This document shows, piece by piece, positions 8,515-42,301 of a stretch of DNA of 64,000 nt (position 1 is the first letter of the stretch; each line of letters starts with the position of its first letter). Below the pieces are notes generated by a model. It was not told the origin of the DNA, made no database searches, and was given only the letters and a program-made list of their open reading frames with translations. The stretch is taken from the IMG/VR virus record IMGVR_UViG_3300022935_000005, positions 186,001 to 250,000 of that record. One strand, written 5' to 3'. A program made the translations under genes and the position numbers.

Positions 8515-9258
8515 ATGGAAAAGAAGATTAAGAAAGTGGTGGCGTTTGATTTTGACGACACCTTGGCCGTTACGAACTCACACGTAGGGATAAGGTCTAA
8601 TTTACTCGAGAATGCTTTCACCATTGCATCTCGTCTCGGATTAGATATCGCCTCCCGAGACGAAGACTGGATCTGGGTTAACTCGACCAACTACGAGACT
8701 TTTCTGTCTTTTTCTAGTGTGTCGATATCTGATTTTGAATATGATTATTCAGAAACAATGGCAGTAGATTTAGATTCAGTGTCCCCAATCCCTTCAATGA
8801 TTATACAGTTGAAGGAATATCTCGCAGATCCCGATTGTTTGGTAATAATCTTGACGGCAAGGGCAGGCTACACTGACGTCTGGAGTCCTGTGAATAAGTG
8901 TGTAATTCCCTCCACAAACAGAGAGGGTATCGCTTCGTTCCTTAATTCACAAGGAATTATCATTCCTGATCACCACATCCATACCGTAGGTGATGTAGCT
9001 GCTGAAGGTGGTCTTACATCAGTGGCTAAGGCGAATGTTTTATCTCATTATGCGATCGCCTACCAACCTGAGGAAATCATATTTTATGATGACAGCGAGA
9101 GAAATATCGCTCGCGCGTCCAAGATACACTTGAGAGAAGGTGTAAATTCCAGGATCACGCTAAACTACGTAAAAGACGGTCATGTCGCACGTTCCGTCCA
9201 GAGCAATAAAGGGTTAAAACAGTGGTTGTACCGCATATTTAAGACTATGCTGGAGTAA
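8515..9258 (+). CDS. HAD-superfamily phosphatase
   Basis: VAFDFDDTL, ILTAR, K, FYDDSERN motifs I-IV. Confidence 0.75.
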   Translation: MEKKIKKVVAFDFDDTLAVTNSHVGIRSNLLENAFTIASRLGLDIASRDEDWIWVNSTNYETFLSFSSVSISDFEYDYSETMAVDLDSVSPIPSMIIQLKEYLADPDCLVIILTARAGYTDVWSPVNKCVIPSTNREGIASFLNSQGIIIPDHHIHTVGDVAAEGGLTSVAKANVLSHYAIAYQPEEIIFYDDSERNIARASKIHLREGVNSRITLNYVKDGHVARSVQSNKGLKQWLYRIFKTMLE

Positions 9259-10067
9259 TGCCTGTGAAAGACCTGAGAAAACTAGTTTCCCTGCTTTTAG
9301 AAGAAGGGTACCAAAGCCATACTTTCGAGCCCGTAGTTGGTGATATTGTTGCCAATGATAACCCAAACTGTAAGCATCGAGGATCGATTGGCAGAGTCCT
9401 AACCATCCAAGCTCTGGATAATGACCAGGGAAAGACGGCGTCTTACGAATGCTTAAACTCTGGAGATGAGTGGGAAGAAGGTGATGTTTTAACAAAGACG
9501 CTCGATCAGTTGGTACCTGCTGTCTCAAAAGACTTCGCGTATCATATGACGAATGGTCTAGGCATGACTGAATCGATATATCGCCCCGGTTCCAGAGCTT
9601 TTTTTGACCTCGTAAGAGAGTTTCGAGTTTTGTCTCACAGAGGAGCCTACTCACCCTCCTACTTCGAGTCGTACTATCTTTTTGAGACTGACTTGGGCGA
9701 ATATGGTATGTATGATGGTCACCCGGTACCGCTTGACTGGCCAATGCCAGATGAAGACCTTTTCGAAGCAGAATATAAGGGCCGGGATGTCGACCTGAAT
9801 TCTCCTATGAGATCTTCTGGGCCTAAGAAGTACAAGGTCTACACCAAGAATGATAAGGGTAACGTTATCCAAGTTAACTTTGGAGACGCCAAGGGTGGGT
9901 TATCAGCAAAGATGGACGATGATGATGCCCGAGCGAACTTTGCTTCTCGGCACAATTGTGATAGTAAAGCAAAGGAAGATAAGACCAAGCCAGGCTACTG
10001 GTCCTGTCGGCTGCCCAGGTACTGGAAAGAGCTTGGGTTTAAGAAGAATAGTTATAGATTTTGGTAG
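9258..10067 (+). CDS. multidomain phage protein with leader-like N-terminus
   Basis: KDLRKLVSLLLEE N-terminus; C-terminal KKYKVY..VNFGD..RANFASRHNC..PGYWSCR domain. Confidence 0.6.
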   Translation: MPVKDLRKLVSLLLEEGYQSHTFEPVVGDIVANDNPNCKHRGSIGRVLTIQALDNDQGKTASYECLNSGDEWEEGDVLTKTLDQLVPAVSKDFAYHMTNGLGMTESIYRPGSRAFFDLVREFRVLSHRGAYSPSYFESYYLFETDLGEYGMYDGHPVPLDWPMPDEDLFEAEYKGRDVDLNSPMRSSGPKKYKVYTKNDKGNVIQVNFGDAKGGLSAKMDDDDARANFASRHNCDSKAKEDKTKPGYWSCRLPRYWKELGFKKNSYRFW

Positions 10068-10073
10068 GGGATT

Positions 10074-10856
10074 ATGAGACCATTTAAACAAGTCACGATA
10101 TCAGAGGGCGTTTTTGTTAGGGAGTTTTCTGGCGATGTAGACTCAGAAGAGCTCGTCTGGCACCGTGATCAAGAAGACAGACTTATTACGGTGACCGAGT
10201 CTGCTGGCTGGAAGATTCAGCGTGATAATGAGATGCCCGTGGAGATGAAGTCTGGAGATCAATTCTTTATTCCTGCCCTCGAGTGGCACAGGGTCATCAA
10301 GGGCACCGGAAGTTTGTTGATTGAAGTCGACACCAAGGCCGCGCATCCAAGACAGTACGGGGCATCTCAGGGCTCGAAGCGTGATAAACAGCTTGACCAG
10401 ACCAAGAAGGATCTAGAGAAAGCAAAGCAACTTCGTAAGGACGGAAAATCAAAGCAAGCTGATGAGCTTGAGAAAAGAGCATATGCCCGCCGGGACCGCA
10501 TGGAAAAGCAACAAAGAGAAAAGAAAGGGTTCGAAAACACTCCTCGTTCCGATACCAAGAAAGAGTCAATCGATAACGACGATGCAGTTTTAAGAGCTTT
10601 TGTGGAAGAGCTTCTTCTTTCTGAGAAGAAGACGAAAATGTCTAAGAAGACAGAAAAGGCTTTGGAGAAAAAAGCGAAAGAAAAGGGATACACTCTTGGA
10701 TCTGTCAAACAGGAATACAGGAAGGGTCTCGGCGCTTATTATAGCAGCGGGTCTCGAAAAGGAATGACTGCACATCAGTGGGCCATGGCAAGAGTCAATT
10801 CAGCGACTCCCTCTAAGTCTTGGGCTGTTGTTAAGAAATCGAAGGCAAAGAAATGA
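10074..10856 (+). CDS. multidomain protein (cupin-like N-domain, basic C-domains)
   Basis: WHRDQEDR..FIPALEWHRVIKG cupin-like; internal VLRAFVEELLLSE; C-terminal QWAMARVNS domain. Confidence 0.55.
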   Translation: MRPFKQVTISEGVFVREFSGDVDSEELVWHRDQEDRLITVTESAGWKIQRDNEMPVEMKSGDQFFIPALEWHRVIKGTGSLLIEVDTKAAHPRQYGASQGSKRDKQLDQTKKDLEKAKQLRKDGKSKQADELEKRAYARRDRMEKQQREKKGFENTPRSDTKKESIDNDDAVLRAFVEELLLSEKKTKMSKKTEKALEKKAKEKGYTLGSVKQEYRKGLGAYYSSGSRKGMTAHQWAMARVNSATPSKSWAVVKKSKAKK

Positions 10857-11221
10857 AAGTTACAAAAACACATTTGAAGCAGCTGATTGAAACAGCGGTT
10901 TTAAAGGAACAAGTTAGGGGATTGCTCATAGAGCGGATGTCTGTGGCAACAGTTAGTGACATCACAAGATTTAGACCATCGATAGAAGAGTGGGCTGAAG
11001 TTCTTGTGGATGAACTACAGAAAAAAGCTGAGAGGATGAAGGGGCTTGATGATAAAAGGCGGAATAGCATTATTACTATGCTGGTTGATGCAGTCGCCAA
11101 GTCTTTGATCAGCTCGACAGGTTCGATGACGGTCTCTAGTCTTGAGCGACAGAAAAAAGACAAAGAAGAAGAACAATACAAAAAGATGAGAGACTCAAGG
11201 CGTTACGGATATAGCGGATAA
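10853..11221 (+). CDS. MKITK-type leader protein
   Basis: MKVTKTHLKQLIETAVLKE. Confidence 0.6.
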   Translation: MKVTKTHLKQLIETAVLKEQVRGLLIERMSVATVSDITRFRPSIEEWAEVLVDELQKKAERMKGLDDKRRNSIITMLVDAVAKSLISSTGSMTVSSLERQKKDKEEEQYKKMRDSRRYGYSG

Positions 11222-11227
11222 AAGACA

Positions 11228-11497
11228 ATGAGAATCACAAGACGACAACTTAGAGACATTATCCGTGAAGCTCTCGAGCTTGATGAAGACGTCCGCAAGC
11301 GCGGAGACGAGTGGTGTGCTTATGTCGATGACAAGCTGACCAAGGCAGAGAAAGAAAACAACCCCAAGAAATATAAGGGTAAGAAGGTCGGAAGTGTCCA
11401 GCGAACCAAGTCAGGCAAAATCAGGATGAAGGCTCGTGCTTGCTACAAATCAAAGAAAAAGGCCAACAATGCAATGGCCGCAGCAATGATGGGATAA
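11228..11497 (+). CDS. MKITK-type leader protein, basic
   Basis: MRITRRQLRDIIREALELDE. Confidence 0.6.
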   Translation: MRITRRQLRDIIREALELDEDVRKRGDEWCAYVDDKLTKAEKENNPKKYKGKKVGSVQRTKSGKIRMKARACYKSKKKANNAMAAAMMG

Positions 11498-11500
11498 CAA

Positions 11501-11845
11501 ATGTCTACTAGCCCGGAGCTTTACACATATCGAGCGTTCGTTAGGAAAGTGTACGATGGGGATACGGTCACAGTTGACGTCGATCTCGGGTGGTCAGTTG
11601 TGCTCAAAGCTCAAAAGATCCGCCTCGTCCGCATTAATGCTCCAGAAGTTCGTGGAGAACAGCGCACGGAAGGTCTAAAATCTAGAGACGCTTTACGAGA
11701 CAAAATCGGAAACAAGTGGGTAAAGATCAAAACTGAAAAGGATAAGAAGGGTAAATTCGGCCGATGGCTCGGAGAGATCTGGCTTGAAGACGAGTGCGTC
11801 AATGATTGGCTTCTCAAGGAAGGTCATGCTGAGGAGTATAAATGA
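11501..11845 (+). CDS. thermonuclease (SNase-like)
   Basis: VYDGDTV, IRLVRINAPE, GKFGRWLG, NDWLLKEGHA. Confidence 0.9.
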   Translation: MSTSPELYTYRAFVRKVYDGDTVTVDVDLGWSVVLKAQKIRLVRINAPEVRGEQRTEGLKSRDALRDKIGNKWVKIKTEKDKKGKFGRWLGEIWLEDECVNDWLLKEGHAEEYK

Positions 11846-13137
11846 GTCTACTGCTAGAATACAGTAAGTACAATCCTGTGATAAGGGATAGAAGCTATAT
11901 CACTGAAGTTTTAGGGATTAAAGTCCCTCTGTACGAGTCGTATGAGTACTATACTCCAGAGCTACAGTCAAGGATTATTCGAGAGCACTTGCTTCTTGAG
12001 GGCTTCTTTGACGGTTTAAAGAGACTGAAGGATGACGCTCTATTATTCGGTAAATCTCTTAAGCAGATAATCACTAAACCTGACCTCATTGGATCGTTTG
12101 TGGCGGCCCTCAATAAGATGGTACTTAACAAGATGATTAGACCGATAGGGTCTTTTCTTAAGATGGTCAAGGAGAAGCTTACTGAGTTGGGGGCGGACAA
12201 GTTTCCGACGTTCATAAAGTTTGCAGACGGCTTGCTTACAAGCCTCAATAAGATCTTAGAAAAAGTGAATGGTCTAGATGGGTGGAAGAAAGCTGTGGGA
12301 GCGATGAGCTTAGCATTATCCATGAAATACATCTGGAACGAGATCGGTGAGCTGATCGAAGAAGGTCAAAAGAAGATTGGAGAAGTGGTACCAGCTTTTG
12401 ACATAATCAAAGCAGCAGCGGAAGGAGCTGCTGAGGCCGCAGGCGATAAACTGGAGAAAGCCAAGGAGGCTGTAAAGGGTCTTTTGAGCTGGCTGAAAGA
12501 GCAGATAGTAGAGAAAGCCGGTGAATTTATAAAAGAGAAGCTTAAGGGTCTAGCTACGTCTGTTTTAGGGTCTGCGATATCAGGTGGTGTTAAAAAAGTC
12601 TGGGACACCCTTACAGCTCTTTACGGAGGAGCGAAATTTGTTATGGATACGTTAAATCCAGCGTTCAAGCGTTTTACACACAAAGTGACTGCCGAAAGTA
12701 CACTTCGTGAATACGTAAGAGAGCTTTTATCTGAGCAAGCCAGTTACGGGTCAGCAGACGGCCAGTCTCGGATTGTCAAAGTCAATAACATGAAGATTCG
12801 TATAGACTTAGAAGATCTAGACTACAGAGCCACTCAGCACTCTAGAGAGCGTCAGCACCGACATAAGGATTCTTCCGGCCGCGGATTCAAGATATCGGGT
12901 GATTCCATCCAGAGAGCTATTGACGCTGCAATTGGTAACATCATAAACGACTATGCCAATGGCGAACTCAGGAACAACGAGCGGTTCTTGATCGCCGCGA
13001 AAACAGGGAAAGGTGACCCGCTGAATATTGTTGGCGCTCTGAATATGCAGAAGGGTCCTGACGATTTTGCAGTTATTACAGTAATGAGAAAGCAGAATTT
13101 TATGTCTGATCTGCCGACGTACGAGGTGAGTCTATGA
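11842..13137 (+). CDS. multidomain protein: helical domain plus possible RelE/DUF4258-like C-domain, with internal leader motifs
   Basis: RIIREHLLLE and ESTLREYVRELLSE motifs; C-domain HSRERQHR..VITVMRK. Confidence 0.5.
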   Translation: MSLLLEYSKYNPVIRDRSYITEVLGIKVPLYESYEYYTPELQSRIIREHLLLEGFFDGLKRLKDDALLFGKSLKQIITKPDLIGSFVAALNKMVLNKMIRPIGSFLKMVKEKLTELGADKFPTFIKFADGLLTSLNKILEKVNGLDGWKKAVGAMSLALSMKYIWNEIGELIEEGQKKIGEVVPAFDIIKAAAEGAAEAAGDKLEKAKEAVKGLLSWLKEQIVEKAGEFIKEKLKGLATSVLGSAISGGVKKVWDTLTALYGGAKFVMDTLNPAFKRFTHKVTAESTLREYVRELLSEQASYGSADGQSRIVKVNNMKIRIDLEDLDYRATQHSRERQHRHKDSSGRGFKISGDSIQRAIDAAIGNIINDYANGELRNNERFLIAAKTGKGDPLNIVGALNMQKGPDDFAVITVMRKQNFMSDLPTYEVSL

Positions 13138-13442
13138 AGCTGTTATCATGGCTCAAACATCGATTAAGCCACAAACTAGAACATTTCTCCCTAGAAAATC
13201 TTAAACGTTTCCTGAAAGAAAACGGTCTCGCGTTTGTTGTTATATTTCTAGCGTGGGAGATTATCGAGGATGTACTTTTCCCGATCCTCTTTACCGTTTT
13301 AGGAACATACGTCCACCCTGTGTTTTACGCAGGTGTTCCAGCAGCTTGGCTCCTTTGTTTACACTGGCTAGCAGTACCACTGATGTGGGGTGCATGGGTA
13401 AAGATTAGAGGAAAAAGGAAAGACAATGAGCCTTCTTCGTGA
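13134..13442 (+). CDS. small membrane protein
   Basis: Two to three hydrophobic segments. Confidence 0.55.
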   Translation: MKLLSWLKHRLSHKLEHFSLENLKRFLKENGLAFVVIFLAWEIIEDVLFPILFTVLGTYVHPVFYAGVPAAWLLCLHWLAVPLMWGAWVKIRGKRKDNEPSS

Positions 13443-13950
13443 ATACATCAAAGAGATCCTAAATGAGGGTGTTGAGTTCCATGAGCTTGATTCGCCCTTA
13501 ACCTATAATAGATCACGTAACGTGAAGCGCTTGGCATATTGTGATACATCAGTCACCGAACCGCCAGAAGGTCATGACACATATTTCACGGAATATCAGA
13601 GGATGGAAAGATATGGAAAAACCGGCCGGCGTCTGAAGAAGCCACGAAAAGGTGAGCTAATCCCAGGAGTTTCGAATGTTTGTGTTATCGGCTTTCTTGA
13701 CTATCACCACTACGGTAAAACTGCAGAAGGAAAGGACATGTGGTACATTGACTACATGAAGACCCGGGGTGATTCAACAGGTCAAGGCGTTGCCAGTAAA
13801 CTCATAGATGAATTCTTTGAGAGGTACGTCGATCCAGACGGTGGGTACGTTCACTTCGGCAAGATGATGAGAAAAGAGATCGGGCATCTTAAAGACAAGA
13901 TGGCCGAGAAGTACCCTAATGCAGAAGTAATCGGGGCTGTGAATTATTGA
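13426..13950 (+). CDS. LLREYI-leader protein, GNAT-like acetyltransferase
   Basis: MSLLREYIKEILNE; YIDYMKTRGDSTGQGVASKLID resembles GNAT motif A. Confidence 0.6.
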   Translation: MSLLREYIKEILNEGVEFHELDSPLTYNRSRNVKRLAYCDTSVTEPPEGHDTYFTEYQRMERYGKTGRRLKKPRKGELIPGVSNVCVIGFLDYHHYGKTAEGKDMWYIDYMKTRGDSTGQGVASKLIDEFFERYVDPDGGYVHFGKMMRKEIGHLKDKMAEKYPNAEVIGAVNY

Positions 13951-14528
13951 TGAGACTACTTCGCGAATACATAAGAGAGCTGCTGAAAGAATCTGTTGAT
14001 CCCAAGATCATGTCAATGATCGATCGTGCAGAAAAGGCTGGCTTCAAGGTCGTTGTTAGGAGTGGTTATACGGCTGTGTACGACCCTAATATCGATGTTT
14101 CAGACTGGTATGAGGGCTATATTGGTCCAGCAAACAGGGTAGCAGGTATATCTTGGAACCCAAGTCCGGGAGCACATGGGCAACCTTGTTCTGGCGCCAA
14201 GGAAGTATCAGTTTCCGGCGCCAAAGAATTCGGGATGGGTCCATTAGCTTATGACGTTGCGATCGAAGCTTCGGGTGGTCTAATGTCTGACAGGCTGGAG
14301 GTTTCGAAAGACGCAAGAAATGTGTGGAAACATTACATGAAGAAGCGACCTGACGTGATAATCCAACAACTTGACAACCTGAAAAACGAGCTCACCCCAG
14401 AAAGAGAAGACAACTGTGATCATCCAGATGGATTTTCGGTTAGCTCACCACTTACAAAAATGTACTCTAAGATTGGAACGCCAGTCATGGATGAGCTGCG
14501 ACGACGAGGGATGTTGGAAGAACAATGA
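13950..14528 (+). CDS. LLREYI-leader protein, GNAT-like paralog 1
   Basis: MRLLREYIRELLKESVDPKIMSM; FGMGPLAYDVAIE..SDRLEVSKDARNVW. Confidence 0.6.
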   Translation: MRLLREYIRELLKESVDPKIMSMIDRAEKAGFKVVVRSGYTAVYDPNIDVSDWYEGYIGPANRVAGISWNPSPGAHGQPCSGAKEVSVSGAKEFGMGPLAYDVAIEASGGLMSDRLEVSKDARNVWKHYMKKRPDVIIQQLDNLKNELTPEREDNCDHPDGFSVSSPLTKMYSKIGTPVMDELRRRGMLEEQ

Positions 14529-15073
14529 GACTACTTCGTGAGTATATAAGGGAAATCTTGAGTGAGAACAAGCTGCGTGTCTTCGATTTTGATGACACAC
14601 TTGCTGTCACTGATTCCATGATTATACTTACTAAAGCGACGGGTGAGCAGATAAAGCAGACTCCTGGAGAGTGGGCCATATACATACCTGAACCCGGCGA
14701 TGAGTTCGATTACAGCGAGTTCGGCGGCGAGTTAATGAACCCTCGAGAAATCAAAGACTACATGAATATCCTCCGCCGCGTTTTGGGAGCAGGTACAGAC
14801 GGTCGCAAAGCTGTGATCTTAACTGCTCGTGCTGAAGTTGCTCGACAGGGCATCATTAACTTTTTACAAGACATTGGTCTCAACGTAAACGACATTGAGA
14901 TTGTAACGCTTGGTGAATCCGACCCACAATTTAAGGCGCGATGGATTGAAGACAAGATAAATAGCGGTTATGACGATGTGTATTTTGTCGATGACTCTGA
15001 TAAAAATATAGCGGCTGTGCAAGCGCTAGCTGTGAAATATCCCAATATAAAGTTGAGGACACAACTGGTATGA
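14525..15073 (+). CDS. LLREYI-leader protein, HAD-superfamily phosphatase
   Basis: MRLLREYIREILSE; VFDFDDTL, ILTAR, FVDDSDKN. Confidence 0.75.
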   Translation: MRLLREYIREILSENKLRVFDFDDTLAVTDSMIILTKATGEQIKQTPGEWAIYIPEPGDEFDYSEFGGELMNPREIKDYMNILRRVLGAGTDGRKAVILTARAEVARQGIINFLQDIGLNVNDIEIVTLGESDPQFKARWIEDKINSGYDDVYFVDDSDKNIAAVQALAVKYPNIKLRTQLV

Positions 15074-15687
15074 AACTATTGCGCGAATACATAAGAGAGC
15101 TACTGAAAGAATCTGTTGACCCCAAGATCATGTCAATGATTGACAGAGCTGAAGCTGCAGGTTACAAAGTCAGACTGTTTGTGGTCCCAAAGCAGGGAGG
15201 ATCTGTCAGGTTGGTTGAACCCGGTGACAAACCTCTACGACTGGACGGCAAAAACGCAATAGGTTCGGTTGAATGGAGAAAACCAAAGTTCAGCGATCAT
15301 GGCAATTGCTCAGGCGGACAAAGCGTAGGTTGGTCTGAAGCTGATGGTGGATTCGGGCCGCTGTTATATGATGTTGCGATCGAAGCATCAGGCGGTTTAA
15401 TGCCCGATAGATTCGAAGTATCCGGTGAGGCAGAGGCAGTGTGGGATAGATACATGAACTCTCGTTCTGATGTTATTGTTCGCCAGCTGGATATCTTACC
15501 TGACTACGAAGAACCACAGATCACCCCCGACAATCCCAACGATGATTGCAGCCAAGTTCCAGCGCACGACATGCTGAAGGACAAGTGGCATACATCTTCC
15601 CTCAGCAAGATATACAGCAAGTCAGGTACTCCCGTTATTGATGAACTGATCAAGCGCGGCATGTTGATAGATAATAGGACAGTGTGA
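15070..15687 (+). CDS. LLREYI-leader protein, GNAT-like paralog 2
   Basis: MKLLREYIRELLKESVDPKIMSM; GGFGPLLYDVAIE..PDRFEVSGEAEAVW. Confidence 0.6.
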   Translation: MKLLREYIRELLKESVDPKIMSMIDRAEAAGYKVRLFVVPKQGGSVRLVEPGDKPLRLDGKNAIGSVEWRKPKFSDHGNCSGGQSVGWSEADGGFGPLLYDVAIEASGGLMPDRFEVSGEAEAVWDRYMNSRSDVIVRQLDILPDYEEPQITPDNPNDDCSQVPAHDMLKDKWHTSSLSKIYSKSGTPVIDELIKRGMLIDNRTV

Positions 15688-16049
15688 TGAATCTACTGCG
15701 CGAGTACGTAAGGGCTTTGCTTACTGAAAAGACTATCGCCATTGGCCAATGTTATCCCCATGCGATCAAGATGGCTCAACAGTCATCTGATGAAGAGTGG
15801 GATGATCTAGACAAGTTCAAGGTGGTCCACGGAAAAGTGACGAACAAATGGAATGATGAGTCATATGAGCATGCTTGGGTTGAAAAGGGTGACATGATAT
15901 TCGACTGGCAAACACACGTAACAAAGCCAGAAGGGATTCCAAAAGCTGTGTACTACGATAACTTCCAACCTGAAGCTTATGAAGAATACACTGCTGAAGA
16001 AGCTATAATCAATTGTACTAAGTCAGGGCAAGCGGGGCCTTGGAGATGA
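15687..16049 (+). CDS. LLREYI-leader protein, possible papain/transglutaminase-like Cys-His-Asp domain
   Basis: MNLLREYVRALLTE; GQCYPHA..VVHG..HAWVE..IFDW. Confidence 0.5.
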   Translation: MNLLREYVRALLTEKTIAIGQCYPHAIKMAQQSSDEEWDDLDKFKVVHGKVTNKWNDESYEHAWVEKGDMIFDWQTHVTKPEGIPKAVYYDNFQPEAYEEYTAEEAIINCTKSGQAGPWR

Positions 16050-16552
16050 ACCTGCTTCGCGAATACATAAGAGAGTTACTGACCGAGGAATCTACTACTG
16101 TTTCTCTACACAGAGGGTCAACTGAAGATTACTTCAGAGTGAATTTCAGCGTGGACGGTAGAATGGTTGGTTATGCAGAGGTCAACTCAACTCGTAGGTA
16201 CTCGAACTGCCAAGAAAATGTTATGGAACTTGAACAATCTCCAGAGTACATTGAAGCCAAAGAACGGCACGAGGCGACAAGCAAGTGGAGCTGGTCACCA
16301 AAGATGTACGTTACGAATAACGTCTGGATCCCCAACGAAGCTGACAGAGGGAAAGGTTACGGTAAGTTGATATATCAGGCAGCCATTGACCAGGCAATTC
16401 AATACGCAAGGTCTAGCGGTGGTGTGTTTATCGGTTCGGACGCATGCGATTCTGCCGGTTCCACCTCAGCTGATGCGGGCCGTGTATGGAGTTCACTGGG
16501 ACAACAGTTCGGTGCTAGCTCAGGCCAACTGATATTCGTGAGGACAAACTAA
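16046..16552 (+). CDS. LLREYI-leader protein, GNAT-like acetyltransferase
   Basis: MNLLREYIRELLTE; DRGKGYGKLIYQAAI (motif A)..SADAGRVW. Confidence 0.65.
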   Translation: MNLLREYIRELLTEESTTVSLHRGSTEDYFRVNFSVDGRMVGYAEVNSTRRYSNCQENVMELEQSPEYIEAKERHEATSKWSWSPKMYVTNNVWIPNEADRGKGYGKLIYQAAIDQAIQYARSSGGVFIGSDACDSAGSTSADAGRVWSSLGQQFGASSGQLIFVRTN

Positions 16553-17511
16553 TGAACCTACTCCGCGAGTACATAAGAGAGCTGCTGTTAAAAGAAGTCA
16601 AGTCCTCTGAACTTCCATGGGCAGAACTGTCTGATATTTTACGTAAAAAATTTCCTGGGTTTGGCGAAGAAGTAGAGATGCCGGCAGGAGGGAAACGTAA
16701 GCCTTTCGAGATAGAGCAGAGGACGGTGGCAGATAGGGGTCCCCAGAGATTGGCTAGCTTTACCATCGGATATGGTGACTTCTCCTACGATAAGCCTGCC
16801 ACTAAATTCTCTGACGCTGATTTAGACGCTGTCGTTGATGAGATCGATAAGTGGGCTGCTAATTTTGGATTACATGTGGCAAGAGACCAACTCGCCATGA
16901 ATAGCAATATCGCAATGCTCAAAGTCGGGCTGATGGATCTGGAGACAGACGAAGTCGAGAAACCAGCGAAACTATATCATGTAACAGATCCTGTGACAGC
17001 TGAGACGATTCTCTCGCAAGGTTTAGAACCTCAGTCAGCTAGACGGCGAGGCAAGGCTGGAAAAGCAGGTGATATGATGGGTGCAGCAGGGAGAAGTTAC
17101 CCTGGCAGAATATTCATGTTCACAGATGCACAGACTGCCCTCGCTAGAGCTTCGAAGACTGCAAAGATTATGCATAGGCTTTCCTTTGTTAGGGATGTCT
17201 TAGAAGACGAAGCAGAGTACGAGAAGGGCGCCTCTCAAACAATCGGTAAGTCAGAAACCCCAGTTGTTTTAGAGATTGACGGATCTGCTGTCGGTAAAGT
17301 AATGGCAGATCCAGATTTTGAGATGGGTAAGGGTGCCGTATTCTCAACAGATGCAGTTCCACCATCTGCGATATCGAAGTATAAAGATGTAGACAGGGGC
17401 AGCTTCGAATACGATTGGCGAGATAACTATAAAGTAAGAGAGATGCTCAGAAGTGATTATGGCGGCACAATGTCAAAAATCAAAGCATGGGAGCAGAGCC
17501 AAGGATTATGA
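16552..17511 (+). CDS. LLREYI-leader protein with Tpt1/KptA / ADP-ribosyltransferase-like domain
   Basis: KLYHVTDPVTAETILSQGLEP, GRIFMFTD, VVLEID, VFSTDAVPPSAI. Confidence 0.6.
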   Translation: MNLLREYIRELLLKEVKSSELPWAELSDILRKKFPGFGEEVEMPAGGKRKPFEIEQRTVADRGPQRLASFTIGYGDFSYDKPATKFSDADLDAVVDEIDKWAANFGLHVARDQLAMNSNIAMLKVGLMDLETDEVEKPAKLYHVTDPVTAETILSQGLEPQSARRRGKAGKAGDMMGAAGRSYPGRIFMFTDAQTALARASKTAKIMHRLSFVRDVLEDEAEYEKGASQTIGKSETPVVLEIDGSAVGKVMADPDFEMGKGAVFSTDAVPPSAISKYKDVDRGSFEYDWRDNYKVREMLRSDYGGTMSKIKAWEQSQGL

Positions 17512-18059
17512 AACTACTACGCGAATACATAAGAGAGCTACTGAAAGAATCTGTTGATCCCAAGATCATGTCAATGGTTGATAGACTCGAAGCGGACGGG
17601 GGATATGTTAGAATTAGCAAGAACGCTGCAAGAGTTATTATTGATGGACACAATGTCGCGTTTGTCCAATTCGAAACACCGGGAGTTTGGTCCAAAGGTG
17701 AGTGTTCGGGCGCGAAAATAGTATCTTACTCTGAAGCGGAAAGAAGTTACGGTCCTTTAGCATATGATATCGCCATTGAAGCAACAGGCGGACTTGCACC
17801 AGATCGCGAAGAAGTTTCAGGAGATGCAAAAAACGTTTGGTCTTACTACGAAAAGAATAGACCTGATGTAACAATCGCCCAGCTAGATGATGAAAACAAT
17901 ATGTTGACCCCTGACGGTGGAGACAATTGCAATCAGAAGTCTGCCATGCTGGATGCAGAAAGTTACCACTTTGATAGATCACCGCTCAGTAAGGTATACA
18001 GGAAGTCAGGTACGCCCGTTATAGATGAGTTGCGGAAACGAGGGATGTTGAAGGAATGA
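17508..18059 (+). CDS. LLREYI-leader protein, GNAT-like paralog 3
   Basis: MKLLREYIRELLKESVDPKIMSM; SYGPLAYDIAIE..PDREEVSGDAKNVW. Confidence 0.6.
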   Translation: MKLLREYIRELLKESVDPKIMSMVDRLEADGGYVRISKNAARVIIDGHNVAFVQFETPGVWSKGECSGAKIVSYSEAERSYGPLAYDIAIEATGGLAPDREEVSGDAKNVWSYYEKNRPDVTIAQLDDENNMLTPDGGDNCNQKSAMLDAESYHFDRSPLSKVYRKSGTPVIDELRKRGMLKE

Positions 18060-18904
18060 ATCTACTTCGTGAATACATAAAAGAGGTATTAAGCGAGGTA
18101 ACAGCTCTTCCTCAGGAATACTTCACTGCAATCGATGCCGCTGTGTCTTCTTCAAATTTTTGGGAAGAGCCGAATTCTCAAGATGATATAGACTACTATG
18201 AGTCTAAGGCAGGAGGGGTCATGGCTACTCCTGCCGCAGAGGCTCTTTCTGAGGCTCTAGAAGGGGCTATGGAAGAGGTTGGTCTAGACATGGACATATT
18301 GGTTAGGTCACACGATACAGATGATCTGATGGGAATGTCTCTACATCCCGAGCATCCTGCTTGGCCTAATAGATGGCTCATCGACGCGAAGTGGTACGTC
18401 TCAAAAGAACGCCCGGGAAGAAGCACTATTGACATAGAGATGATGACATCAGAGGATGAAGACAACATTTCTCAAGCTCTGAACACCAGTGAGCTAGTCC
18501 GTCATATTACAGCAACAGTGAGACACGAGCTAGTACATTATCGACAGATGAAAAAACAGGCTGCCCATAAGGGGCTGGATGACACCGCCGCTTTTGAGGA
18601 AATGCTGAAAGATCCCCGCCAGATTCCGCCGGGCTCCGCGGATGATCCGGAGTGGCAGAAGAAGTACTTGAGTTCTCATATAGAGATCGATGCTCACGCT
18701 CACGATGCCGCCGAAGACTTGATCGCTGTATACTCCGCTAAAGAGATTGACGCAATACTCAGTAAAAAGGTTGATCTGTCTGATGATAGACTGCCCAACG
18801 CTGTTAAGCACTATATCGAGGTTCTTGGGCCCGACGATAAATCAACTCGTAAGTTCATGAGTAAGCTTTATACACAAGTCGAAAAGATGAAAAGTAGAAG
18901 ATAA
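18056..18904 (+). CDS. LLREYI-leader protein, HExxH zinc-metallopeptidase-like
   Basis: MNLLREYIKEVLSE; VRHELVHYRQ..YLSSHIEIDAHA. Confidence 0.65.
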   Translation: MNLLREYIKEVLSEVTALPQEYFTAIDAAVSSSNFWEEPNSQDDIDYYESKAGGVMATPAAEALSEALEGAMEEVGLDMDILVRSHDTDDLMGMSLHPEHPAWPNRWLIDAKWYVSKERPGRSTIDIEMMTSEDEDNISQALNTSELVRHITATVRHELVHYRQMKKQAAHKGLDDTAAFEEMLKDPRQIPPGSADDPEWQKKYLSSHIEIDAHAHDAAEDLIAVYSAKEIDAILSKKVDLSDDRLPNAVKHYIEVLGPDDKSTRKFMSKLYTQVEKMKSRR

Positions 18905-23235: not shown

Positions 23236-23237
23236 GT

Positions 23238-29085: not shown

Positions 29086-29147
29086 CCTATAGATAGATTA
29101 AAGGATAGAAAAAACTGATGAACAAAAGTGTTTAATACCTTCTTATC

Positions 29148-29314: not shown

Positions 29315-29320
29315 CTTTTT

Positions 29321-36865: not shown

Positions 36866-38803
36866 ATGGGAGCACTTGGCGGCCACATGGCTCATCTTCA
36901 TGAGTCATTAGAACTTACGTTTGATGAACTTTCGACTATTCTTGATAGTGTAGCAAACGCTGACATATCGGCGACTGAAAAGGTTGATGGTCAAAACCTG
37001 TTTTTGACAGTGAAGAGTGACGGGTCTATCAACACTGCCCGTAATGGCGGGGACCTAAAGAAGGGTGGAATGACTCCTAATGAGTTTGCTGCTAAGTGGA
37101 AGGGTCACCCCGCGGAGAGCGCTTTCACTAAGGGGTTCGAGGCAATCTCTCAAGCTATTAAATCCCTTGACCAGTCGACTTTAAATGACTTGTTTGCCAA
37201 TGGGACGAGATACGTTAATATGGAAGTCATGTACCCAGGCAATCCGAACATGATCGTGTATGATGCCGGCAACGTGGTACTTCATAACTTCCAAACGTTC
37301 GATTCTTCTGGCGCTCCCGTCGATGATCCAGACGCCCGCACCGCATTTCAACAGCTTGTTTCTGCTGTCGATGAAGCTGAGTCTGATGTCGATGGTGAAG
37401 CTTGGCTAGTGAAGGGTCCTGTAATCGCCCAGCTGCAGAGGCTAGCAGATGGGACAGCGCTCAAGGAAGTTCAAGCAGCGATCCAGAGGATTGCTTCGCC
37501 AGTGGGGATGTCTGCGACACTTGGGGATCTCGCAGAGTTGCGCTTGAGAGCCACGGCAATTCAGGCCGGTATACCAGAAAATAAGGTCGACCAGATGATG
37601 GACGCTGCGTTCGAGCGTGAGGGCGCTGCGTCTGTTAGGGACATCAAGAAAGGTTTGACGAAAGAACAGCAGGGCGTTGTTTCGAAGTTGGCAACTAAAG
37701 CCAACGCCAGGAAAGCGGTTGGTGCAGCCATGAAGCCGCTTGAATTAGCGATTACTGACTTTGCGATTGAAGTCCTCAGAGGGATGGAGAGCTACTTTGT
37801 TTCTGATACTGATAAGGAATTGGCCCGACAACGGAATGAGCTTTCTAGGGCCATTGACTACCTCGAGGGACTAGCTACATCAGGTGACGAGGAGGTCGGT
37901 AAGATGGTCGACCGCCAGCTTGAGAAGTTGACTGACATCGAGAATCAGATTAATAGTACGATGGAGGGTATCGTCTTTGAATATCCACCTGGATCGGGAG
38001 AACTTAAGAAGCTTACCGGATCATTTGCGATGATGAATCAATTGGTTGGGAGAGCAAAGCGAGCAGGTATGCCTTCTGGTAGTGCGGTCGAGGAATCGTA
38101 TGGTCGAGCTGCGTTCTCTTCTAGTGAATCAGCTTCGATTTACGACTTGATCTTGAATGAGCAAGCCTTCGTCGATAAGGGAAAGAGGGTCGGGTTGATT
38201 CCTGTCTCTGGAAAGCCGTATCACGCAGGACATCATTATCTTGTAGAGCAGGCAGCTGCCGATAATGACGAAGTTGTGCTTTTCGTTTCTACCTCTGATA
38301 GGAAAAGGAAAGGTGAAATGTCTATCTTGGGTGTAGACATGCTTCAAGTCTGGAAGCAAGAGCTAGAGAAGATTATGCCTACAAATGTCCGGGTAGAGTA
38401 CGGAGGATCTCCTGTTCGTAAAGTCTATGACACCATTGGGAAAGCGTGTGAAGCGGGTGACGCTGAGGAAACCTACGTCATCTATTCAGATCCCACAGAC
38501 ACGATGCAGAACTACCCGCAAGTGAATAGAGACAAATACATGCAGCCTATGTGTCGAATGGGACAAGTGGTTTTTGCGGCAGAAGAAGACCCGACAAGGT
38601 TTGAGAGAGGGGAGGGTTCACCAGATGTAAGCGGTACGAAAATGCGCGCCGCCATGGCAGCTGGAGATTTTGAAACCTTTGCAGCTGGTATGCCCGCAGG
38701 GGTTAACTCAAGAAATGTCTGGAGCATCTTGACTCACGATGAACCTTCTCCCACGTCGGAATCCAAGAAGTACTCTCTGGTATCAGCCCTTTACGGAAGT
38801 TAG
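36866..38803 (+). CDS. fusion of ligase-like nucleotidyltransferase domain and HIGH-family nucleotidyltransferase
   Basis: TEKVDGQNL (KxDG), MEGIVF, KLTG; then GKPYHAGH..VSGTKMR. Confidence 0.65.
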   Translation: MGALGGHMAHLHESLELTFDELSTILDSVANADISATEKVDGQNLFLTVKSDGSINTARNGGDLKKGGMTPNEFAAKWKGHPAESAFTKGFEAISQAIKSLDQSTLNDLFANGTRYVNMEVMYPGNPNMIVYDAGNVVLHNFQTFDSSGAPVDDPDARTAFQQLVSAVDEAESDVDGEAWLVKGPVIAQLQRLADGTALKEVQAAIQRIASPVGMSATLGDLAELRLRATAIQAGIPENKVDQMMDAAFEREGAASVRDIKKGLTKEQQGVVSKLATKANARKAVGAAMKPLELAITDFAIEVLRGMESYFVSDTDKELARQRNELSRAIDYLEGLATSGDEEVGKMVDRQLEKLTDIENQINSTMEGIVFEYPPGSGELKKLTGSFAMMNQLVGRAKRAGMPSGSAVEESYGRAAFSSSESASIYDLILNEQAFVDKGKRVGLIPVSGKPYHAGHHYLVEQAAADNDEVVLFVSTSDRKRKGEMSILGVDMLQVWKQELEKIMPTNVRVEYGGSPVRKVYDTIGKACEAGDAEETYVIYSDPTDTMQNYPQVNRDKYMQPMCRMGQVVFAAEEDPTRFERGEGSPDVSGTKMRAAMAAGDFETFAAGMPAGVNSRNVWSILTHDEPSPTSESKKYSLVSALYGS

Positions 38804-39938: not shown

Positions 39939-40391
39939 ATGGCGAGCACAATCAGTACAGCTACTCTACAAGTCCAGATACTTGAAGACATTGAGCTTAA
40001 TGGAGTCAAGAGGGGGTCTAGGGCGTACCACACATTTGCTAATATTAAGCAAATCGATGAGAGAATTCTAACGGTACCTACATATGAGGTAGATATTCTG
40101 CTTCTTAGCTCTTCAGCTGCTGCTGGTACTTATGCTACCAATAGCTTTAAGTACGCGAGGCTTACCAATCTAGATGATACTAATTATGTTTCGATCACCC
40201 TGCTGTCTGGTTCGCAGGGCTCGAAGTCAGTCCAGAAATTGCTTCCTAAGACGAGTATGATGATAACAGACCTTGCTCTATCAGGGTCATCAGCGGGTGT
40301 TTCTTTCGGGTCATTCAACGATATCACAGCTGTAAAGGCTAGCGCTAATTCTGCTAATGTTGATTTGTCGCTTTTTGTGGCTACAACTTAG
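39939..40391 (+). CDS. hypothetical, probable virion protein
   Basis: Ser/Thr/Ala-rich beta-type; YARLTNLDDTNYV; preceded by ATATTTA. Confidence 0.5.
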   Translation: MASTISTATLQVQILEDIELNGVKRGSRAYHTFANIKQIDERILTVPTYEVDILLLSSSAAAGTYATNSFKYARLTNLDDTNYVSITLLSGSQGSKSVQKLLPKTSMMITDLALSGSSAGVSFGSFNDITAVKASANSANVDLSLFVATT

Positions 40392-40753
40392 TGTCTAACG
40401 AATATAATCCAAGGTGAGATTCATATGAACAGTAACCAAAGAACTGACAGAGGCAAGAATGGTTGATCTTGAATTGAGCTTAAAGGCACTACAAGCGGGT
40501 ATTTTACCTGCCTTCTCCGGTGATGAGGTTGCCAAGCTGCTTGAGACATGTGATCCAGAAGAGGCTCATCGTCTTAAGCGGAGGTTTCGTAAGCTGTGGC
40601 GGAAAGAAATGAAAGCTCAACTTCGTGATTGTTCTTCTGATATTGAGATTAAGCGCACTGCCGCTACATTTTCGACGCCTGCTTCGAAAAGAGCAACTGT
40701 TAAGTTCAAGCTATTAAGCGAGATTTTAGGAAAAAAAGAAGAGTAAGAAAGCT

Positions 40754-42301
40754 ATGCCTTATAATAAAAGAAAGCAAAAGTGCACACAGTCAGACGGTGA
40801 CAAAGGAAACTATGTCCTTTCTTATACTGACAAGAAAGGGAAAAAGCACCGTGCCTGTCATACCAGTAAGAAGAACATGCAAGGTCAGATCGCTGCGATA
40901 GAAGCTGAAGCTGACACGTCTGAATCTGACATGCTCGAAGAAATTAGAGCTTTAGTAAGAGAAGAGGTGATGAGGCTTGGGGGATCTTCAGCAGAGGTTG
41001 GTCCAATCAAGCAAGATATGGATCTTATGTCTGTAGCTAAGGATATGTTGGAAGCAGGCGACTCTGAAGGACTTGAGGATCTAGTTGACCTTAACAACGC
41101 TATCTATACTTCTATCGATAAGCGGGACGCTTGGGAGTCTATTGGCGAACAGCTATTAACCGCTTGGGGCTTTGACGCTCCAGCTCAAGGTAAGAAGGCT
41201 GCTGCTGCTTCCGAGGGTGGTAGCGACGGCTCTGTCGCGACTTTTTGGGACGTGAGAAAAGAAGGTGTGCTATATTCTGTGAAGACGAGTTTTAAGACTC
41301 CAACGAAGCCGACTAACTACAAGCAAGCAACTCAAAGCTCCAATATAAAGTTGTCAGCACTTTTTTCTGCAATAAAAGAAAATCCGCCAGGAACAAAGCT
41401 GGGAAATATTGGCTGTATTTACTCTGAGGAAGAAAACTCTCGTGTTATTGGGTGGGGAAACGTGACAGCACCAATATCGTCTGACGATCTTAGTCAAAAA
41501 ATAAGGAGCATCATCCAGAAAAATGTTGCCCCTGAAAATGTTGAAATCATTTTAAGCTCGTACGATTCTTTAGTGGGAACTGCTACTGGCAAAAAAATGT
41601 CTAAAGACGAGACAGTTACAACAAAGCTTATCATTCGTGCACTCTCTTCAGCCGGACTATCGACCTCAGATGGAAGGCTTACAGGTAAGGCTGAACAATT
41701 TTTAGGCAGCTACTCTGAAGGAACACCGATAGCATCTCTCGCTGTTTATGAACCGTCATATTTCTTTAAGGAGACGATGGGTAAATTAGGTGACGTTGAT
41801 GATAACCAATTGTCTCTCTTTGATTTGCCAAAGGCAGATAAAGAATTTGCTTCTGACGGAGAAAGAAATGACGTTGTTAAGAGGCTTGGGACGCTAGCAA
41901 GAGGAATGTCTACGACACAGCTTGACAAGCTATTGTCAGCAGCCAGAGAAATTATGAATGAGTCATTAATACGTGAGTACATTAGTGAGGCCACACTAAT
42001 CAATGAAGAGTTAACGGGCTCTGATAAGTCTGAAATCAAGCGGATGATAAAGAAAGAGATCGAAGGTGCCACCAACCGTAAAGAGATCGATAAGGCTTTT
42101 AAGAAAGCTTTCGATTCAGAGCTCAAGAAATCCCTTAGCTCAAAGTCTGTTGTAGACGAGATCCAGAAAGAAGTTGAGAAGAGCATGGGCTCATCTGCGA
42201 ACCGAGAAGTGGTGGTCCGGATTTGCAAAGACGTTTTAGTCAAGCTGTACAGAGAGCTTAGTTTCTCGTATAAGCCAGTTATTGACAGAATGAAAGTGTA
42301 A
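40754..42301 (+). CDS. multidomain protein with internal leader motifs and possible PD-(D/E)xK-like domain
   Basis: LEEIRALVREE and ESLIREYISE motifs; ESIGEQ..WDV..YSVKTS. Confidence 0.5.
   Translation: MPYNKRKQKCTQSDGDKGNYVLSYTDKKGKKHRACHTSKKNMQGQIAAIEAEADTSESDMLEEIRALVREEVMRLGGSSAEVGPIKQDMDLMSVAKDMLEAGDSEGLEDLVDLNNAIYTSIDKRDAWESIGEQLLTAWGFDAPAQGKKAAAASEGGSDGSVATFWDVRKEGVLYSVKTSFKTPTKPTNYKQATQSSNIKLSALFSAIKENPPGTKLGNIGCIYSEEENSRVIGWGNVTAPISSDDLSQKIRSIIQKNVAPENVEIILSSYDSLVGTATGKKMSKDETVTTKLIIRALSSAGLSTSDGRLTGKAEQFLGSYSEGTPIASLAVYEPSYFFKETMGKLGDVDDNQLSLFDLPKADKEFASDGERNDVVKRLGTLARGMSTTQLDKLLSAAREIMNESLIREYISEATLINEELTGSDKSEIKRMIKKEIEGATNRKEIDKAFKKAFDSELKKSLSSKSVVDEIQKEVEKSMGSSANREVVVRICKDVLVKLYRELSFSYKPVIDRMKV

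What the first reader, a model, noticed from the sequence alone, without database searches (positions are those of the whole stretch)
9258..42301. The same tag recurs between domains, suggesting protease-processed polyproteins
Seen: the motif sits at apparent domain junctions. Examples are VLRAFVEELLLSE (about 10587-10625), RIIREHLLLE (about 11971-12000), ESTLREYVRELLSE (about 12694-12735), LEEIRALVREE (about 40934) and ESLIREYISE..LINEE (about 41960). Related L-x-E linkers lie in 22165 (PKLSE) and 36866 (IYDLILNE), and outside this span in 53477 and 55440. Inference: these are gene fusions of tagged cassettes, or polyproteins cut into separate enzymes during head maturation.
Basis: partly seen in the sequence, partly recalled or inferred. 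Interest (0 to 1): 0.65.

Follow-up and report, generated by a model that had tools for sequence, protein, structure and literature searches.

The report
Capsid-targeting-like tags joining fused phage genes
A 281-kb T4-like phage from salt marshes puts the same short helical tag, ending in Leu-x-Glu, at the start of about 27 unrelated genes, and where such genes have fused the tag survives between the modules, which probably marks proteins loaded into the capsid and cut by the head protease, though cutting is not shown.

Summary
The motif is real and lies at the stated coordinates. It is foremost an N-terminal tag. About 27 of 370 putative genes of this 280,913-bp T4-like phage start with it, in two arrays inside the window. 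A tag profile gave 32 hits against 1 in reversed proteins.

Internal copies were tested by comparing architectures:
- For ORFs 10074, 11842 (second copy) and 40754 (second copy), the downstream module exists elsewhere as a stand-alone gene. That gene starts with the tag exactly where the internal copy aligns.
- The first copy in 40754 is supported by one homologue.
- AlphaFold2 places the 11842 tag as a lone helix between two confident domains.
- RIIREHLLLE lies inside a conserved module.
- PKLSE and IYDLILNE are no better than chance.

Fusion of tagged cassettes is therefore well supported. Cleavage is only inferred, from four observations:
- The genome encodes a gp21-type (S77) prohead protease.
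- Every tag ends in [LIVM]-x-E.
- The capsid protein aligns VLRE with T4 gp23's cut site.
- Type A tags match the T4 IPII/IPIII targeting sequence at I8 and E10.

No proteomic evidence exists. This is a new variant of the T4 capsid-targeting principle.

The parts
13426..18904 (+). Array of nine consecutive genes, each starting with the type A tag M-x-LLREYIRELL-x-E. Tag starts: 13426, 13950, 14525, 15070, 15687, 16046, 16552, 17508, 18056. Cargo is varied: weak GNAT, HAD-like, an HExxH domain, and unknowns.
   Evidence: for the tags. for weak Pfam hits. Codons vary synonymously inside the tag.
52299..55901 (+). Array of about eleven small genes, each starting with the type B tag MKITKxQLRRIIKEE(K/R)AKLLxE.
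12694..12735 (+). Internal type A tag (ESTLREYVRELLSE, aa 285-298 of ORF 11842-13137). It lies between a helical N-module and a DUF4258-like C-module.
   Evidence: Nine stand-alone homologues of the C-module (144-154 aa, 64-90% identical) start with a tag at this aligned position. The modules occur separately in 186 relatives. AlphaFold2 shows a lone helix at 284-300 (pLDDT about 60), then a disordered stretch at 300-325. The two differences seen here in other populations are synonymous.
10587..10625 (+). Internal tag (VLRAFVEELLLSE, aa 172-184 of ORF 10074-10856). It precedes the DUF5824 core. A cupin-like domain and a basic stretch lie upstream.
   Evidence: Many stand-alone DUF5824 proteins of about 80-165 aa begin with tag variants directly before the same core. 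Pelagiphage HTVC111P has the core without a tag.
41954..42007 (+). Internal tag (MNESLIREYISEATLINE, aa 401-418 of ORF 40754-42301). It starts with an in-frame ATG and precedes the C-terminal module DLTGSDKSEIKRMIKKE...
   Evidence: The module stands alone behind an N-terminal tag (P0165, P0171, P0175). It also follows other modules through a tag (P0166, P0167, P0169). One search shows the ATG. The AlphaFold2 model is too weak to use.
40931..40966 (+). Tag-like helix (MLEEIRALVREE, aa 60-71 of ORF 40754). It starts with an in-frame ATG, after a basic N-terminal module.
   Evidence: P0166 has the same N-terminal module joined directly to the C-terminal module without the middle domain, so a module boundary lies here. 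This rests on one homologue only.
11971..12000 (+). RIIREHLLLE: a conserved helix inside the N-module of ORF 11842, not a junction between separable domains. It could still be a conserved L-x-E site.
   Evidence: It is conserved in the N-module homologues shown (consensus). The segment before it co-occurs with the module, 106 against 111 hits. It lies in helix 39-55 with pLDDT above 90.
11842..11862 (+). Degenerate type A tag (MSLLLEY) at the N-terminus of ORF 11842.
   Evidence: Homologue P0020 begins MSLLREYIR at the same place.
9258..9305 (+). N-terminal tag variant (MPVKDLRKLVSLLLEE) of ORF 9258-10067.
   Evidence: Homologue P0167 has a type B tag directly before the same domain.
10853..10909 (+). 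Type B-like N-terminal tag of ORF 10853-11221.
   Evidence: read directly. It is below the profile threshold.
11228..11278 (+). Type B tag of ORF 11228-11497.
   Evidence: 16.7 bits.
20487..20531 (+). Type A-like tag (NESTIRTYVRECLLE) near the start of ORF 20457-21305. The true start codon is uncertain.
   Evidence: 6.1 bits. The homologue in L008 starts with the tag.
53708..53764 (+). Second, internal type B tag of ORF 53477. It begins with GTG, four bases after GAAGGT. It is a fossil gene start that may still be used.
   Evidence: (7.1 bits). The same pattern, EGK or GES followed by M or V, occurs in relatives.
55659..55697 (+). Decayed second type B tag of ORF 55440 (VRLKRHLRKIVSE). There is no start codon here.
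55926..55985 (+). Tag variant on a zeta-toxin / AAA_33 kinase-like protein.
   Evidence: 9.3 bits.
61375..61419 (+). Type B variant (MKITESNIRKIIREE), the probable true start of ORF 61267-61764.
5251..5295 (-). Orphan tag (GLRKLVREVLLLQTT) at the C-terminus of an HD_4 (RelA/SpoT-type HD) protein, with no cargo behind it.
   Evidence: In L005 the same position is an internal tag of a 739-aa three-cassette protein.
22519..22533 (+). PKLSE in ORF 22165: not distinguishable from a chance L-x-E.
   Evidence: Only identical relatives were found.
38138..38161 (+). IYDLILNE in ORF 36866. It lies after a Ser-rich stretch and before a cytidylyltransferase-like domain, but is not supported as a tag.
   Evidence: Only identical relatives were found.

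Best explanation
The tag is a 12-20-residue amphipathic helix ending in [LIVM]-x-Glu. It works like the T4 capsid-targeting sequence.

Proposed mechanism:
- Placed at the N-terminus of otherwise unrelated proteins, it docks them into the scaffolding core of the prohead.
- The phage's gp21-type (Peptidase S77) prohead protease then cuts after the Glu and frees the cargo inside the head. The cargo is presumably delivered with the DNA.
- Because every cassette carries the same tag, neighbouring cassettes are easily shuffled and fused.
- Where the stop codon between two cassettes is lost, the second tag ends up between the modules. It would then act as a built-in cleavage site, so one translation product yields several packaged proteins.

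Shown here:
- The tag exists, and selection acts on its protein sequence.
- Internal copies sit where stand-alone homologues have their N-terminal tag.
- The fused frames are conserved in separate populations.
- The protease gene is present, and L-x-E sites occupy the expected places in the capsid protein and the protease.

Inferred: packaging into the capsid and cleavage at the tags.
For: Tag census: (32 hits against 1 reversed).

Selection on the protein, not the DNA: synonymous codon variation within tags.

Module independence and tag position:
- ORF 11842.
- ORF 40754.
- ORF 10074 / DUF5824.

Structure: the 11842 tag is a lone helix between two confident domains, followed by 25 disordered residues.

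Fossil starts: an in-frame ATG or GTG at internal tags. Relatives keep the Met and the translated ribosome-binding site.

Multi-cassette proteins in relatives: 739 aa in L005 and 881 aa in L024.

The fused frames are real. They are identical in three other IMG/VR assemblies. In estuary and freshwater populations 26 of the 30 differences listed (29 more were not shown) are synonymous, with no stop codon or indel.

Link to head maturation:
- Peptidase_S77 scores 90.6 bits, and PHROG 'head maturation protease' 6.6e-49.
- The His and Ser motifs and an N-terminal LLTE align with T4 gp21.
- The capsid protein aligns VLRE with T4 gp23's FLTE-65 cut site.
- 27 of 27 tagged genes have [LIVM]-x-E ending at aa 8-26, against 103 of 339 untagged genes. 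This is partly by construction, because the seed pattern ends in [LIV][RKSE]E.
- Type A MKLLREYIRE matches T4 IPII/IPIII MKTYQEFIAE at 4-5 of 10 positions in register. These include I8 and E10, the residues reported to govern processing.
- 11 of 13 large tag-bearing IMG/VR records, and 3 of 3 that are at least 90% complete, encode S77.
- [LIVM]-x-E is slightly under-represented in the mature parts of tagged proteins (46 against 53.6 expected). It is over-represented in untagged proteins (1222 against 1089).
Against: - No virion proteome, and no direct evidence of packaging or cleavage.
- The co-fold of protease with tag gave no answer.
- No T4-type late promoter lies upstream of the arrays.
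- With its own seed removed, the tag profile gives the conserved head-module proteins 3.4 bits at most. Their visible resemblance to the tag is therefore not statistically supported.
- Similarity to T4 gp67 is not significant.
- Some internal or C-terminal tags lack the final Glu or are decayed (5251-5295, 55659-55697).
- Some N-module proteins end in a tag with no cargo, which a purely N-terminal propeptide model does not predict.
- A ribosome-binding-site-like GAAGGT plus GTG is retained in ORF 53477. It offers separate translation as another route to separate proteins.
- Co-occurrence with S77 is confounded by shared ancestry.
Confidence: 0.6

Rival explanations
1. Fusion fossils without processing. 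The internal tags are leftovers of former gene starts. The fused proteins act as multidomain proteins, or the downstream module is also made separately from the retained internal start codon. No protease cut occurs at internal tags. The N-terminal tags may still be targeting signals.
For: In-frame ATG or GTG at internal tags, and GAAGGT four bases before the GTG in ORF 53477. Relatives keep a translated ribosome-binding site plus Met or Val before internal type B tags. Decayed copies exist at 55659-55697 and 5251-5295.
Against: Internal type A tags behind the N-module stay well conserved, including the final Glu, across homologues only 25-50% identical and with different cargo. The two differences seen in the 11842 internal tag in other populations are synonymous. 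The tag is followed by a disordered stretch, which would be accessible to a protease.
Confidence: 0.25
2. The tag is a docking or oligomerisation helix for a partner other than the prohead core. The partner could be a phage hub protein, a chaperone or a host complex. The L-x-E ending is then incidental.
For: The tag works in any position: N-terminal, internal and C-terminal copies all occur. No direct link to the capsid was obtained.
Against: The ending [LIVM]-x-E is kept in all 27 N-terminal copies, partly by construction of the seed pattern. The tags resemble the T4 targeting sequence in register. All three complete tag-bearing genomes encode S77. The tag has no hydrophobic core or twin-arginine signal structure, read directly.
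Confidence: 0.1
3. The repeated sequence acts at the DNA level as a recombination or cassette-exchange site. The peptide is a by-product.
For: Type B tags are nearly identical at the DNA level within the genome. Close homologues of one cargo carry different tag types, which points to exchange at the tag.
Against: Abundant synonymous variation with conserved residues. The tag is always in frame and always at protein starts or junctions. Distant relatives keep the peptide pattern with different codons and sequence variants. Recombination is better seen as a consequence of the shared tag.
Confidence: 0.04

Closest known systems
T4 capsid targeting sequence (CTS) of internal proteins IPI, IPII, IPIII and Alt, processed by prohead protease gp21 (Mullaney and Black 1996, as reviewed in PMC9026906, PMC9958956, PMC5694885)
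   Same: - A short N-terminal peptide (10-19 aa in T4, about 14-20 here) sits on otherwise unrelated proteins.
- It ends in (L/I)-x-E.
- A gp21-type S77 protease is in the same genome.
- Type A shares M1, (K2), E6, an aromatic residue at 7, I8 and E10 with T4 IPII/IPIII.
- T-even phages also have variable internal proteins with CTS-like starts.
   Different: - About 27 tagged genes per genome instead of a handful, and two tag types.
- The helix is longer, with a second L-x-E.
- The cargo includes enzyme-like domains.
- Natural multi-cassette fusions have the tag at each junction, and C-terminal copies exist.
- No experimental proof of targeting or cleavage here.
Propeptides of inner-body and ejection proteins of phiKZ, 201phi2-1 and SPN3US, cut by gp175 / gp245
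   Same: Jumbo phages with many head-internal proteins processed after Glu by a gp21-related protease. Multiple cleavage sites occur within one protein.
   Different: Those propeptides are mostly longer than 100 residues and are not one shared short tag. Their motif is S/A/G-x-E. They have no arrays of cassette genes with an identical leader.
Encapsulin cargo-loading peptides
   Same: A short, transferable peptide that loads diverse enzymes into an HK97-fold shell. It can sit at either terminus and works on fusions.
   Different: A different sequence and a non-viral compartment. The peptide is not removed by a maturation protease. This is an analogy only and was not tested.
Polymorphic toxin / effector cassettes with a conserved N-terminal trafficking region
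   Same: A constant leader joined to variable C-terminal modules, arranged in arrays, with frequent swapping and fusion of cassettes.
   Different: Those are bacterial secretion systems. Here the presumed vehicle is a phage capsid. This is an analogy only.
Pfam DUF5824 (PF19141)
   Same: The C-terminal module of ORF 10074 belongs to it. Pfam scores 22.1 bits against a cut-off of 25, and homologues up to 83% identical carry PF19141.
   Different: The family has no described function. One search shows that many members start with the tag, and a pelagiphage member has none. No paper mentions the family.

Membership tests
T4-type capsid targeting sequence / S77-processed propeptide | Short peptide at the extreme N-terminus, shared by otherwise unrelated proteins | tested here: met
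   27 N-terminal copies in 370 putative genes, with cargo unrelated by BLAST and Pfam.
T4-type capsid targeting sequence / S77-processed propeptide | Ends in a (L/I)-x-E site as cut by gp21 | tested here: met
   27 of 27 tagged genes have [LIVM]-x-E ending at aa 8-26, against 103 of 339 untagged genes. This is partly by construction, because the seed pattern ends in [LIV][RKSE]E.
T4-type capsid targeting sequence / S77-processed propeptide | A gp21-type prohead protease is encoded by the same phage | tested here: met
   PF03420 scores 90.6 bits against a cut-off of 27. The match to phrog_207 is 6.6e-49. The protein aligns with T4 gp21.
T4-type capsid targeting sequence / S77-processed propeptide | Sequence relationship to the T4 IPII/IPIII CTS | tested here: inconclusive
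   4-5 of 10 residues are identical in register, including I8 and E10. Only 11 of the 370 genes reach 4 identities, about half of them type A genes (so about 6 of 361 others), and none but a type A gene reaches 5. The tag profile itself does not score T4 IPs.
T4-type capsid targeting sequence / S77-processed propeptide | The tag directs the protein into the prohead | not testable with these tools
   Needs virion proteomics or a reporter fusion.
T4-type capsid targeting sequence / S77-processed propeptide | The tag is removed by the protease | not testable with these tools
   The co-fold of protease and tag gave no answer.
Protease-processed polyprotein | One reading frame holds several modules that also exist as independent proteins | tested here: met
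   ORFs 11842, 40754 and 10074.
Protease-processed polyprotein | A recognisable protease site at each module junction | tested here: met
   The tags at 12694-12735, 10587-10625 and 41954-42007 all end in L-x-E or I-x-E. The 11842 site lies next to a disordered stretch.
Protease-processed polyprotein | The products are actually separated by cleavage | not testable with these tools
   No proteomic data are available.
DUF5824 (PF19141), C-terminal module of ORF 10074 | Match to the family model | tested here: inconclusive
   22.1 bits, below the 25-bit cut-off. Homologues 60-83% identical are precomputed as PF19141.

The most novel reading that the evidence does not exclude
A widespread clade of jumbo T4-like phages, about 250-290 kb and found in salt marsh, estuary and fresh water, uses one transferable, position-independent helix as a universal cargo-loading and cleavage signal. 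Each phage packs dozens of host-takeover enzymes into its capsid. Some are made as natural effector polyproteins that the head protease cuts apart. The tag would then let the injected protein set of uncultured phages be read straight from sequence.
Probability: 0.35. Interest if true: 0.8.

Novelty: new variant of a known kind. Interest (0 to 1): 0.62.

Why it matters
If the tag is a capsid-loading signal, it gives a sequence-only way to list the proteins that an uncultured jumbo phage carries in its head and injects with its DNA. Here that is about 27 proteins. They include domains resembling acetyltransferases, phosphatases, kinases, a RelA/SpoT-type HD hydrolase, metallopeptidases and DUF4258.

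It would also show that the T4 targeting principle has been scaled up in nature into tagged gene arrays and tag-linked multi-cargo proteins. That is the natural counterpart of the engineered CTS fusions used to load foreign proteins into T4.

It also gives context to Pfam DUF5824 and to hundreds of unnamed metagenomic proteins.

Tried and rejected
- BLAST of the fused proteins and their segments against the phage's own ORFs found no paralogues beyond the tags.
- tblastn of ORF 11842 and of its C-module against GenBank phages found nothing.
- Single-protein scans of IMG/VR found only 100% identical contigs for ORFs 11842, 36866 and 22165. The PKLSE and IYDLILNE junctions therefore could not be tested by architecture.
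- The C-terminal domain of ORF 22165 against the tagged HExxH protein 18056: not significant.
- Foldseek of the ORF 11842 model against the PDB: no match at E of 0.001 or better, only generic long helical bundles.
- A PDB sequence search of the ORF 36866 N-domain found nothing.
- The AlphaFold2 model of ORF 40754 was too weak to use (pLDDT 53).
- Co-fold of the protease with the first 45 residues of ORF 18056: no answer, neither support nor evidence against.
- The T4 late promoter TATAAATA is not found upstream of genes. There are 3 copies in the genome against about 10 expected.
- T4 gp67 and gp68 against this genome gave only low-complexity matches.
- The tag profile without its own seed does not significantly score the conserved head-module proteins.
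- PF03420 is absent from the 70-kb record that holds L024. That record is only 21% complete, so this says nothing.
- A loose amphipathic regular expression was rejected as non-specific.
The seeds were then taken from the ORF file instead.
- Literature searches for the motif strings and for DUF5824 found nothing relevant.

Full report
**What the window is.** The window is bases 186001-250000 of a 280,913-bp IMG/VR virus record that is 92% complete.
- The genome has a T4-type head module: terminase, portal, a Peptidase_S77 prohead protease (PF03420, 90.6 bits; PHROG head maturation protease, 6.6e-49), scaffold-like acidic coiled-coil proteins and a gp23-like major head protein.
- Cultured phages share almost nothing with it at the DNA level.
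- The same DNA occurs in at least 14 salt-marsh metagenomes. More diverged forms occur in estuary and freshwater runs.

**The observation.** The motif is first of all an N-terminal tag.
- Nine consecutive genes at 13426-18904 begin M-x-LLREYIRELL-x-E (type A).
- About eleven small genes at 52299-55901, plus 11228, begin MKITKxQLRRIIKEE (type B).
- More copies lie elsewhere in the genome.
- A 12-column profile built from N-terminal copies taken from the ORF file gave 25 hits of 10 bits or more, against 0-1 in shuffles.
- It gave 32 hits of 5 bits or more in 370 putative genes, against 1 in the reversed proteins.
- Within the tags the codons vary freely (CTT/CTA/CTG/TTG, CGT/CGC, AGA/AGG, GAA/GAG) while the residues stay the same. 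Selection therefore acts on the peptide.
- Several apparently internal hits (17487, 54723, 61267, 277734) have a Met directly before the tag. They are start-codon overcalls of the longest-ORF rule.

**Are internal copies at module junctions? ORF 11842.** This ORF (431 aa) gave the clearest answer.
- The word search with residues 280-431 found nine proteins of 144-154 aa, 64-90% identical.
- In the alignment each begins with a tag, type A-like or type B, exactly where ESTLREYVRELLSE lies in the window protein.
- The exhaustive search found 186 relatives.
- The N-module (about aa 3-299) occurs alone, for example in P0013 (313 aa).
- The C-module (about aa 285-431) occurs alone in proteins of roughly 125-155 aa.
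- The C-module also sits at the end of proteins of 546-1061 aa with other cargo. A few relatives carry both modules fused.
- AlphaFold2 with a 102-sequence alignment (mean pLDDT 86.6) gives an all-helical domain at 1-279. The tag is a lone helix at 284-300 with pLDDT about 60. A disordered stretch follows at 300-325, then an alpha/beta domain at 326-431.
- By contrast RIIREHLLLE (aa 44-53) is conserved in the N-module homologues shown. It sits in a helix with pLDDT above 90. It is part of the module, not a junction. The conserved L-x-E-G-F there could still be a processing site.

**ORF 40754.**
- The last module (from about aa 419) stands alone behind an N-terminal tag in P0165, P0171 and P0175.
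- It follows other modules through a tag in P0166, P0167 and P0169.
- P0166 joins the window protein's basic N-terminal module straight to this C-terminal module, without the middle domain. That places a boundary at the first motif as well.
- Both motifs begin with an in-frame ATG.
- The AlphaFold2 model was too weak to use.

**ORF 10074.**
- The module after VLRAFVEELLLSE is the DUF5824 core. The search returned 500 proteins.
- Many of the 120 listed are 80-165 aa long and start with tag variants directly before the same core.
- The member in pelagiphage HTVC111P, a podovirus, has the core without a tag.

**The small proteins and the weak linkers.**
- ORFs 53477 and 55440 each carry a second type B tag.
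- In 53477 the second tag starts with GTG four bases after GAAGGT.
- PKLSE and IYDLILNE do not score with any profile. Bare [LIVM]-x-E occurs about 1.7 times per 100 residues. A loose amphipathic pattern is as common in reversed proteins, 165 against 212.

**Fusion signatures in relatives.**
- L008 has ten consecutive tagged genes.
- L005 has a 739-aa protein made of homologues of window genes 18056 and 5248(-) plus a third part, with tag-like helices between them.
- L024 has an 881-aa protein with tags at its junctions.
- The window's HD_4 gene at 5248-5838(-) ends in an orphan tag with nothing behind it.
- A back-translated type B pattern matched 89 stretches of IMG/VR contigs.
- In 80 such loci the profile gave 413 hits of 8 bits or more, against 0 reversed. 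Of these, 305 were N-terminal.
- Internal copies are often preceded by Met or Val and by EGK or GES, which is the translated ribosome-binding site of a former separate gene.

**The fused frames are genuine.**
- They are identical in three other assemblies.
- Contigs from estuary and freshwater populations span the junctions without indels.
- 26 of the 30 differences listed there (29 more were not shown) are synonymous, including both that fall in the 11842 internal tag.

**Link to head maturation.** In T4, N-terminal targeting sequences of 10-19 residues load IPI-III and Alt into the core. gp21 removes them after Glu. Residues 8 and 10 of the IPIII sequence govern processing. Here:
- The protease aligns with gp21, including the His and Ser motifs and an N-terminal LLTE opposite gp21's LIE-9.
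- The capsid protein has VLRE opposite gp23's FLTE-65 cut site.
- All 27 tagged genes have [LIVM]-x-E ending at aa 8-26, against 30% of untagged genes. This is partly by construction, because the seed pattern ends in [LIV][RKSE]E.
- Type A MKLLREYIRE matches T4 IPII/IPIII MKTYQEFIAE at 4-5 of 10 positions in register, including I8 and E10.
- 11 of 13 large tag-bearing records, and all three complete ones (284-293 kb), encode S77.

These points are consistent with the model but indirect. The resemblance of the tags to the N-termini of two conserved small head-module proteins, and to a conserved h-h-K-E-Y-V-F segment of the protein between portal and protease, is visible by eye. It is not significant once the self-seed is removed.

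**Mechanism and rivals.**
- The best reading is a CTS-like cargo-loading and cleavage tag. Internal copies arose by fusion of tagged cassettes and probably serve as cleavage sites (confidence 0.6 overall). Fusion alone is about 0.9, and cleavage at internal tags about 0.5.
- The main rival is that internal tags are uncut fossils, with separate translation from retained starts in some cases.
- A non-capsid docking role and a DNA-level role are less likely, for the reasons given under rival explanations.

**Comparison and novelty.**
- The principle is known from T4. Reviews already suggest the CTS lets T4-like phages pack varied proteins.
- New here are the scale (about 27 tagged genes per genome), the two tag types in arrays, the enzyme-like cargo, and the natural tag-linked multi-cargo proteins and C-terminal copies.
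- Also new is the spread across a clade of uncultured jumbo phages and into Pfam DUF5824.
- No paper in the searchable library mentions these motifs or DUF5824.

Noticed in passing
window 7170-7509 (-): A phage-encoded tmRNA (Rfam RF00023, 77.8 bits). An overlapping permuted-tmRNA model also matches at 7380-7637.
   Followed up: no
window 24284-29396 (+): A cluster of seven tRNA genes (Met twice, Asn, Glu, Leu, Gln, Thr). Two group I introns lie at 26910-27100 and 27520-27718.
   Followed up: no
window 48001-52000: GC content rises to 0.56 against about 0.45 elsewhere, just upstream of the type B array.
   Followed up: no
window 5248-5838 (-): A RelA/SpoT-type HD_4 domain protein, possibly a (p)ppGpp hydrolase, lies on the opposite strand. 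It has no N-terminal tag but has an orphan C-terminal tag. Relatives carry an N-terminal tag (L008) or sit inside a three-cassette fusion (L005).
   Followed up: partly
L024 1269-3914 and L005 5755-7974: Relatives encode 881-aa and 739-aa proteins made of three or more cassettes with tag-like helices at the junctions. Two HExxH metallopeptidase-like modules are among them.
   Followed up: partly
window 11842-12003 (aa 1-54 of ORF 11842): The N-module family keeps a conserved leader of about 50 residues ending in L-x-E-G-F. This may be a longer propeptide with its own cleavage site.
   Followed up: no
genome 105864-106706 (L001 575-1414) and L116-L120: The protein between portal and protease has a conserved segment (QMSLLREYVF here; TLIKEYIF, KIIKEYVF in relatives) that resembles the core of the type A tag. 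It holds the only LLREY in the genome outside the tags.
   Followed up: partly
window 36866-38803: A 645-aa protein with a ligase-like KxDG motif (EKVDGQN) in its N-terminal part. A cytidylyltransferase-like HxGH domain follows from about aa 436.
   Followed up: partly
L058 and L080: Type B tag pattern on contigs labelled as giant-virus MAG (GVMAG-S-1030632-100) in IMG/VR. These are possibly phage contigs binned with a giant virus.
   Followed up: no
window 10074-13130: One 5,676-base contig in a salt-marsh metatranscriptome library covers the fused genes with no differences. DNA carry-over cannot be excluded.
   Followed up: no
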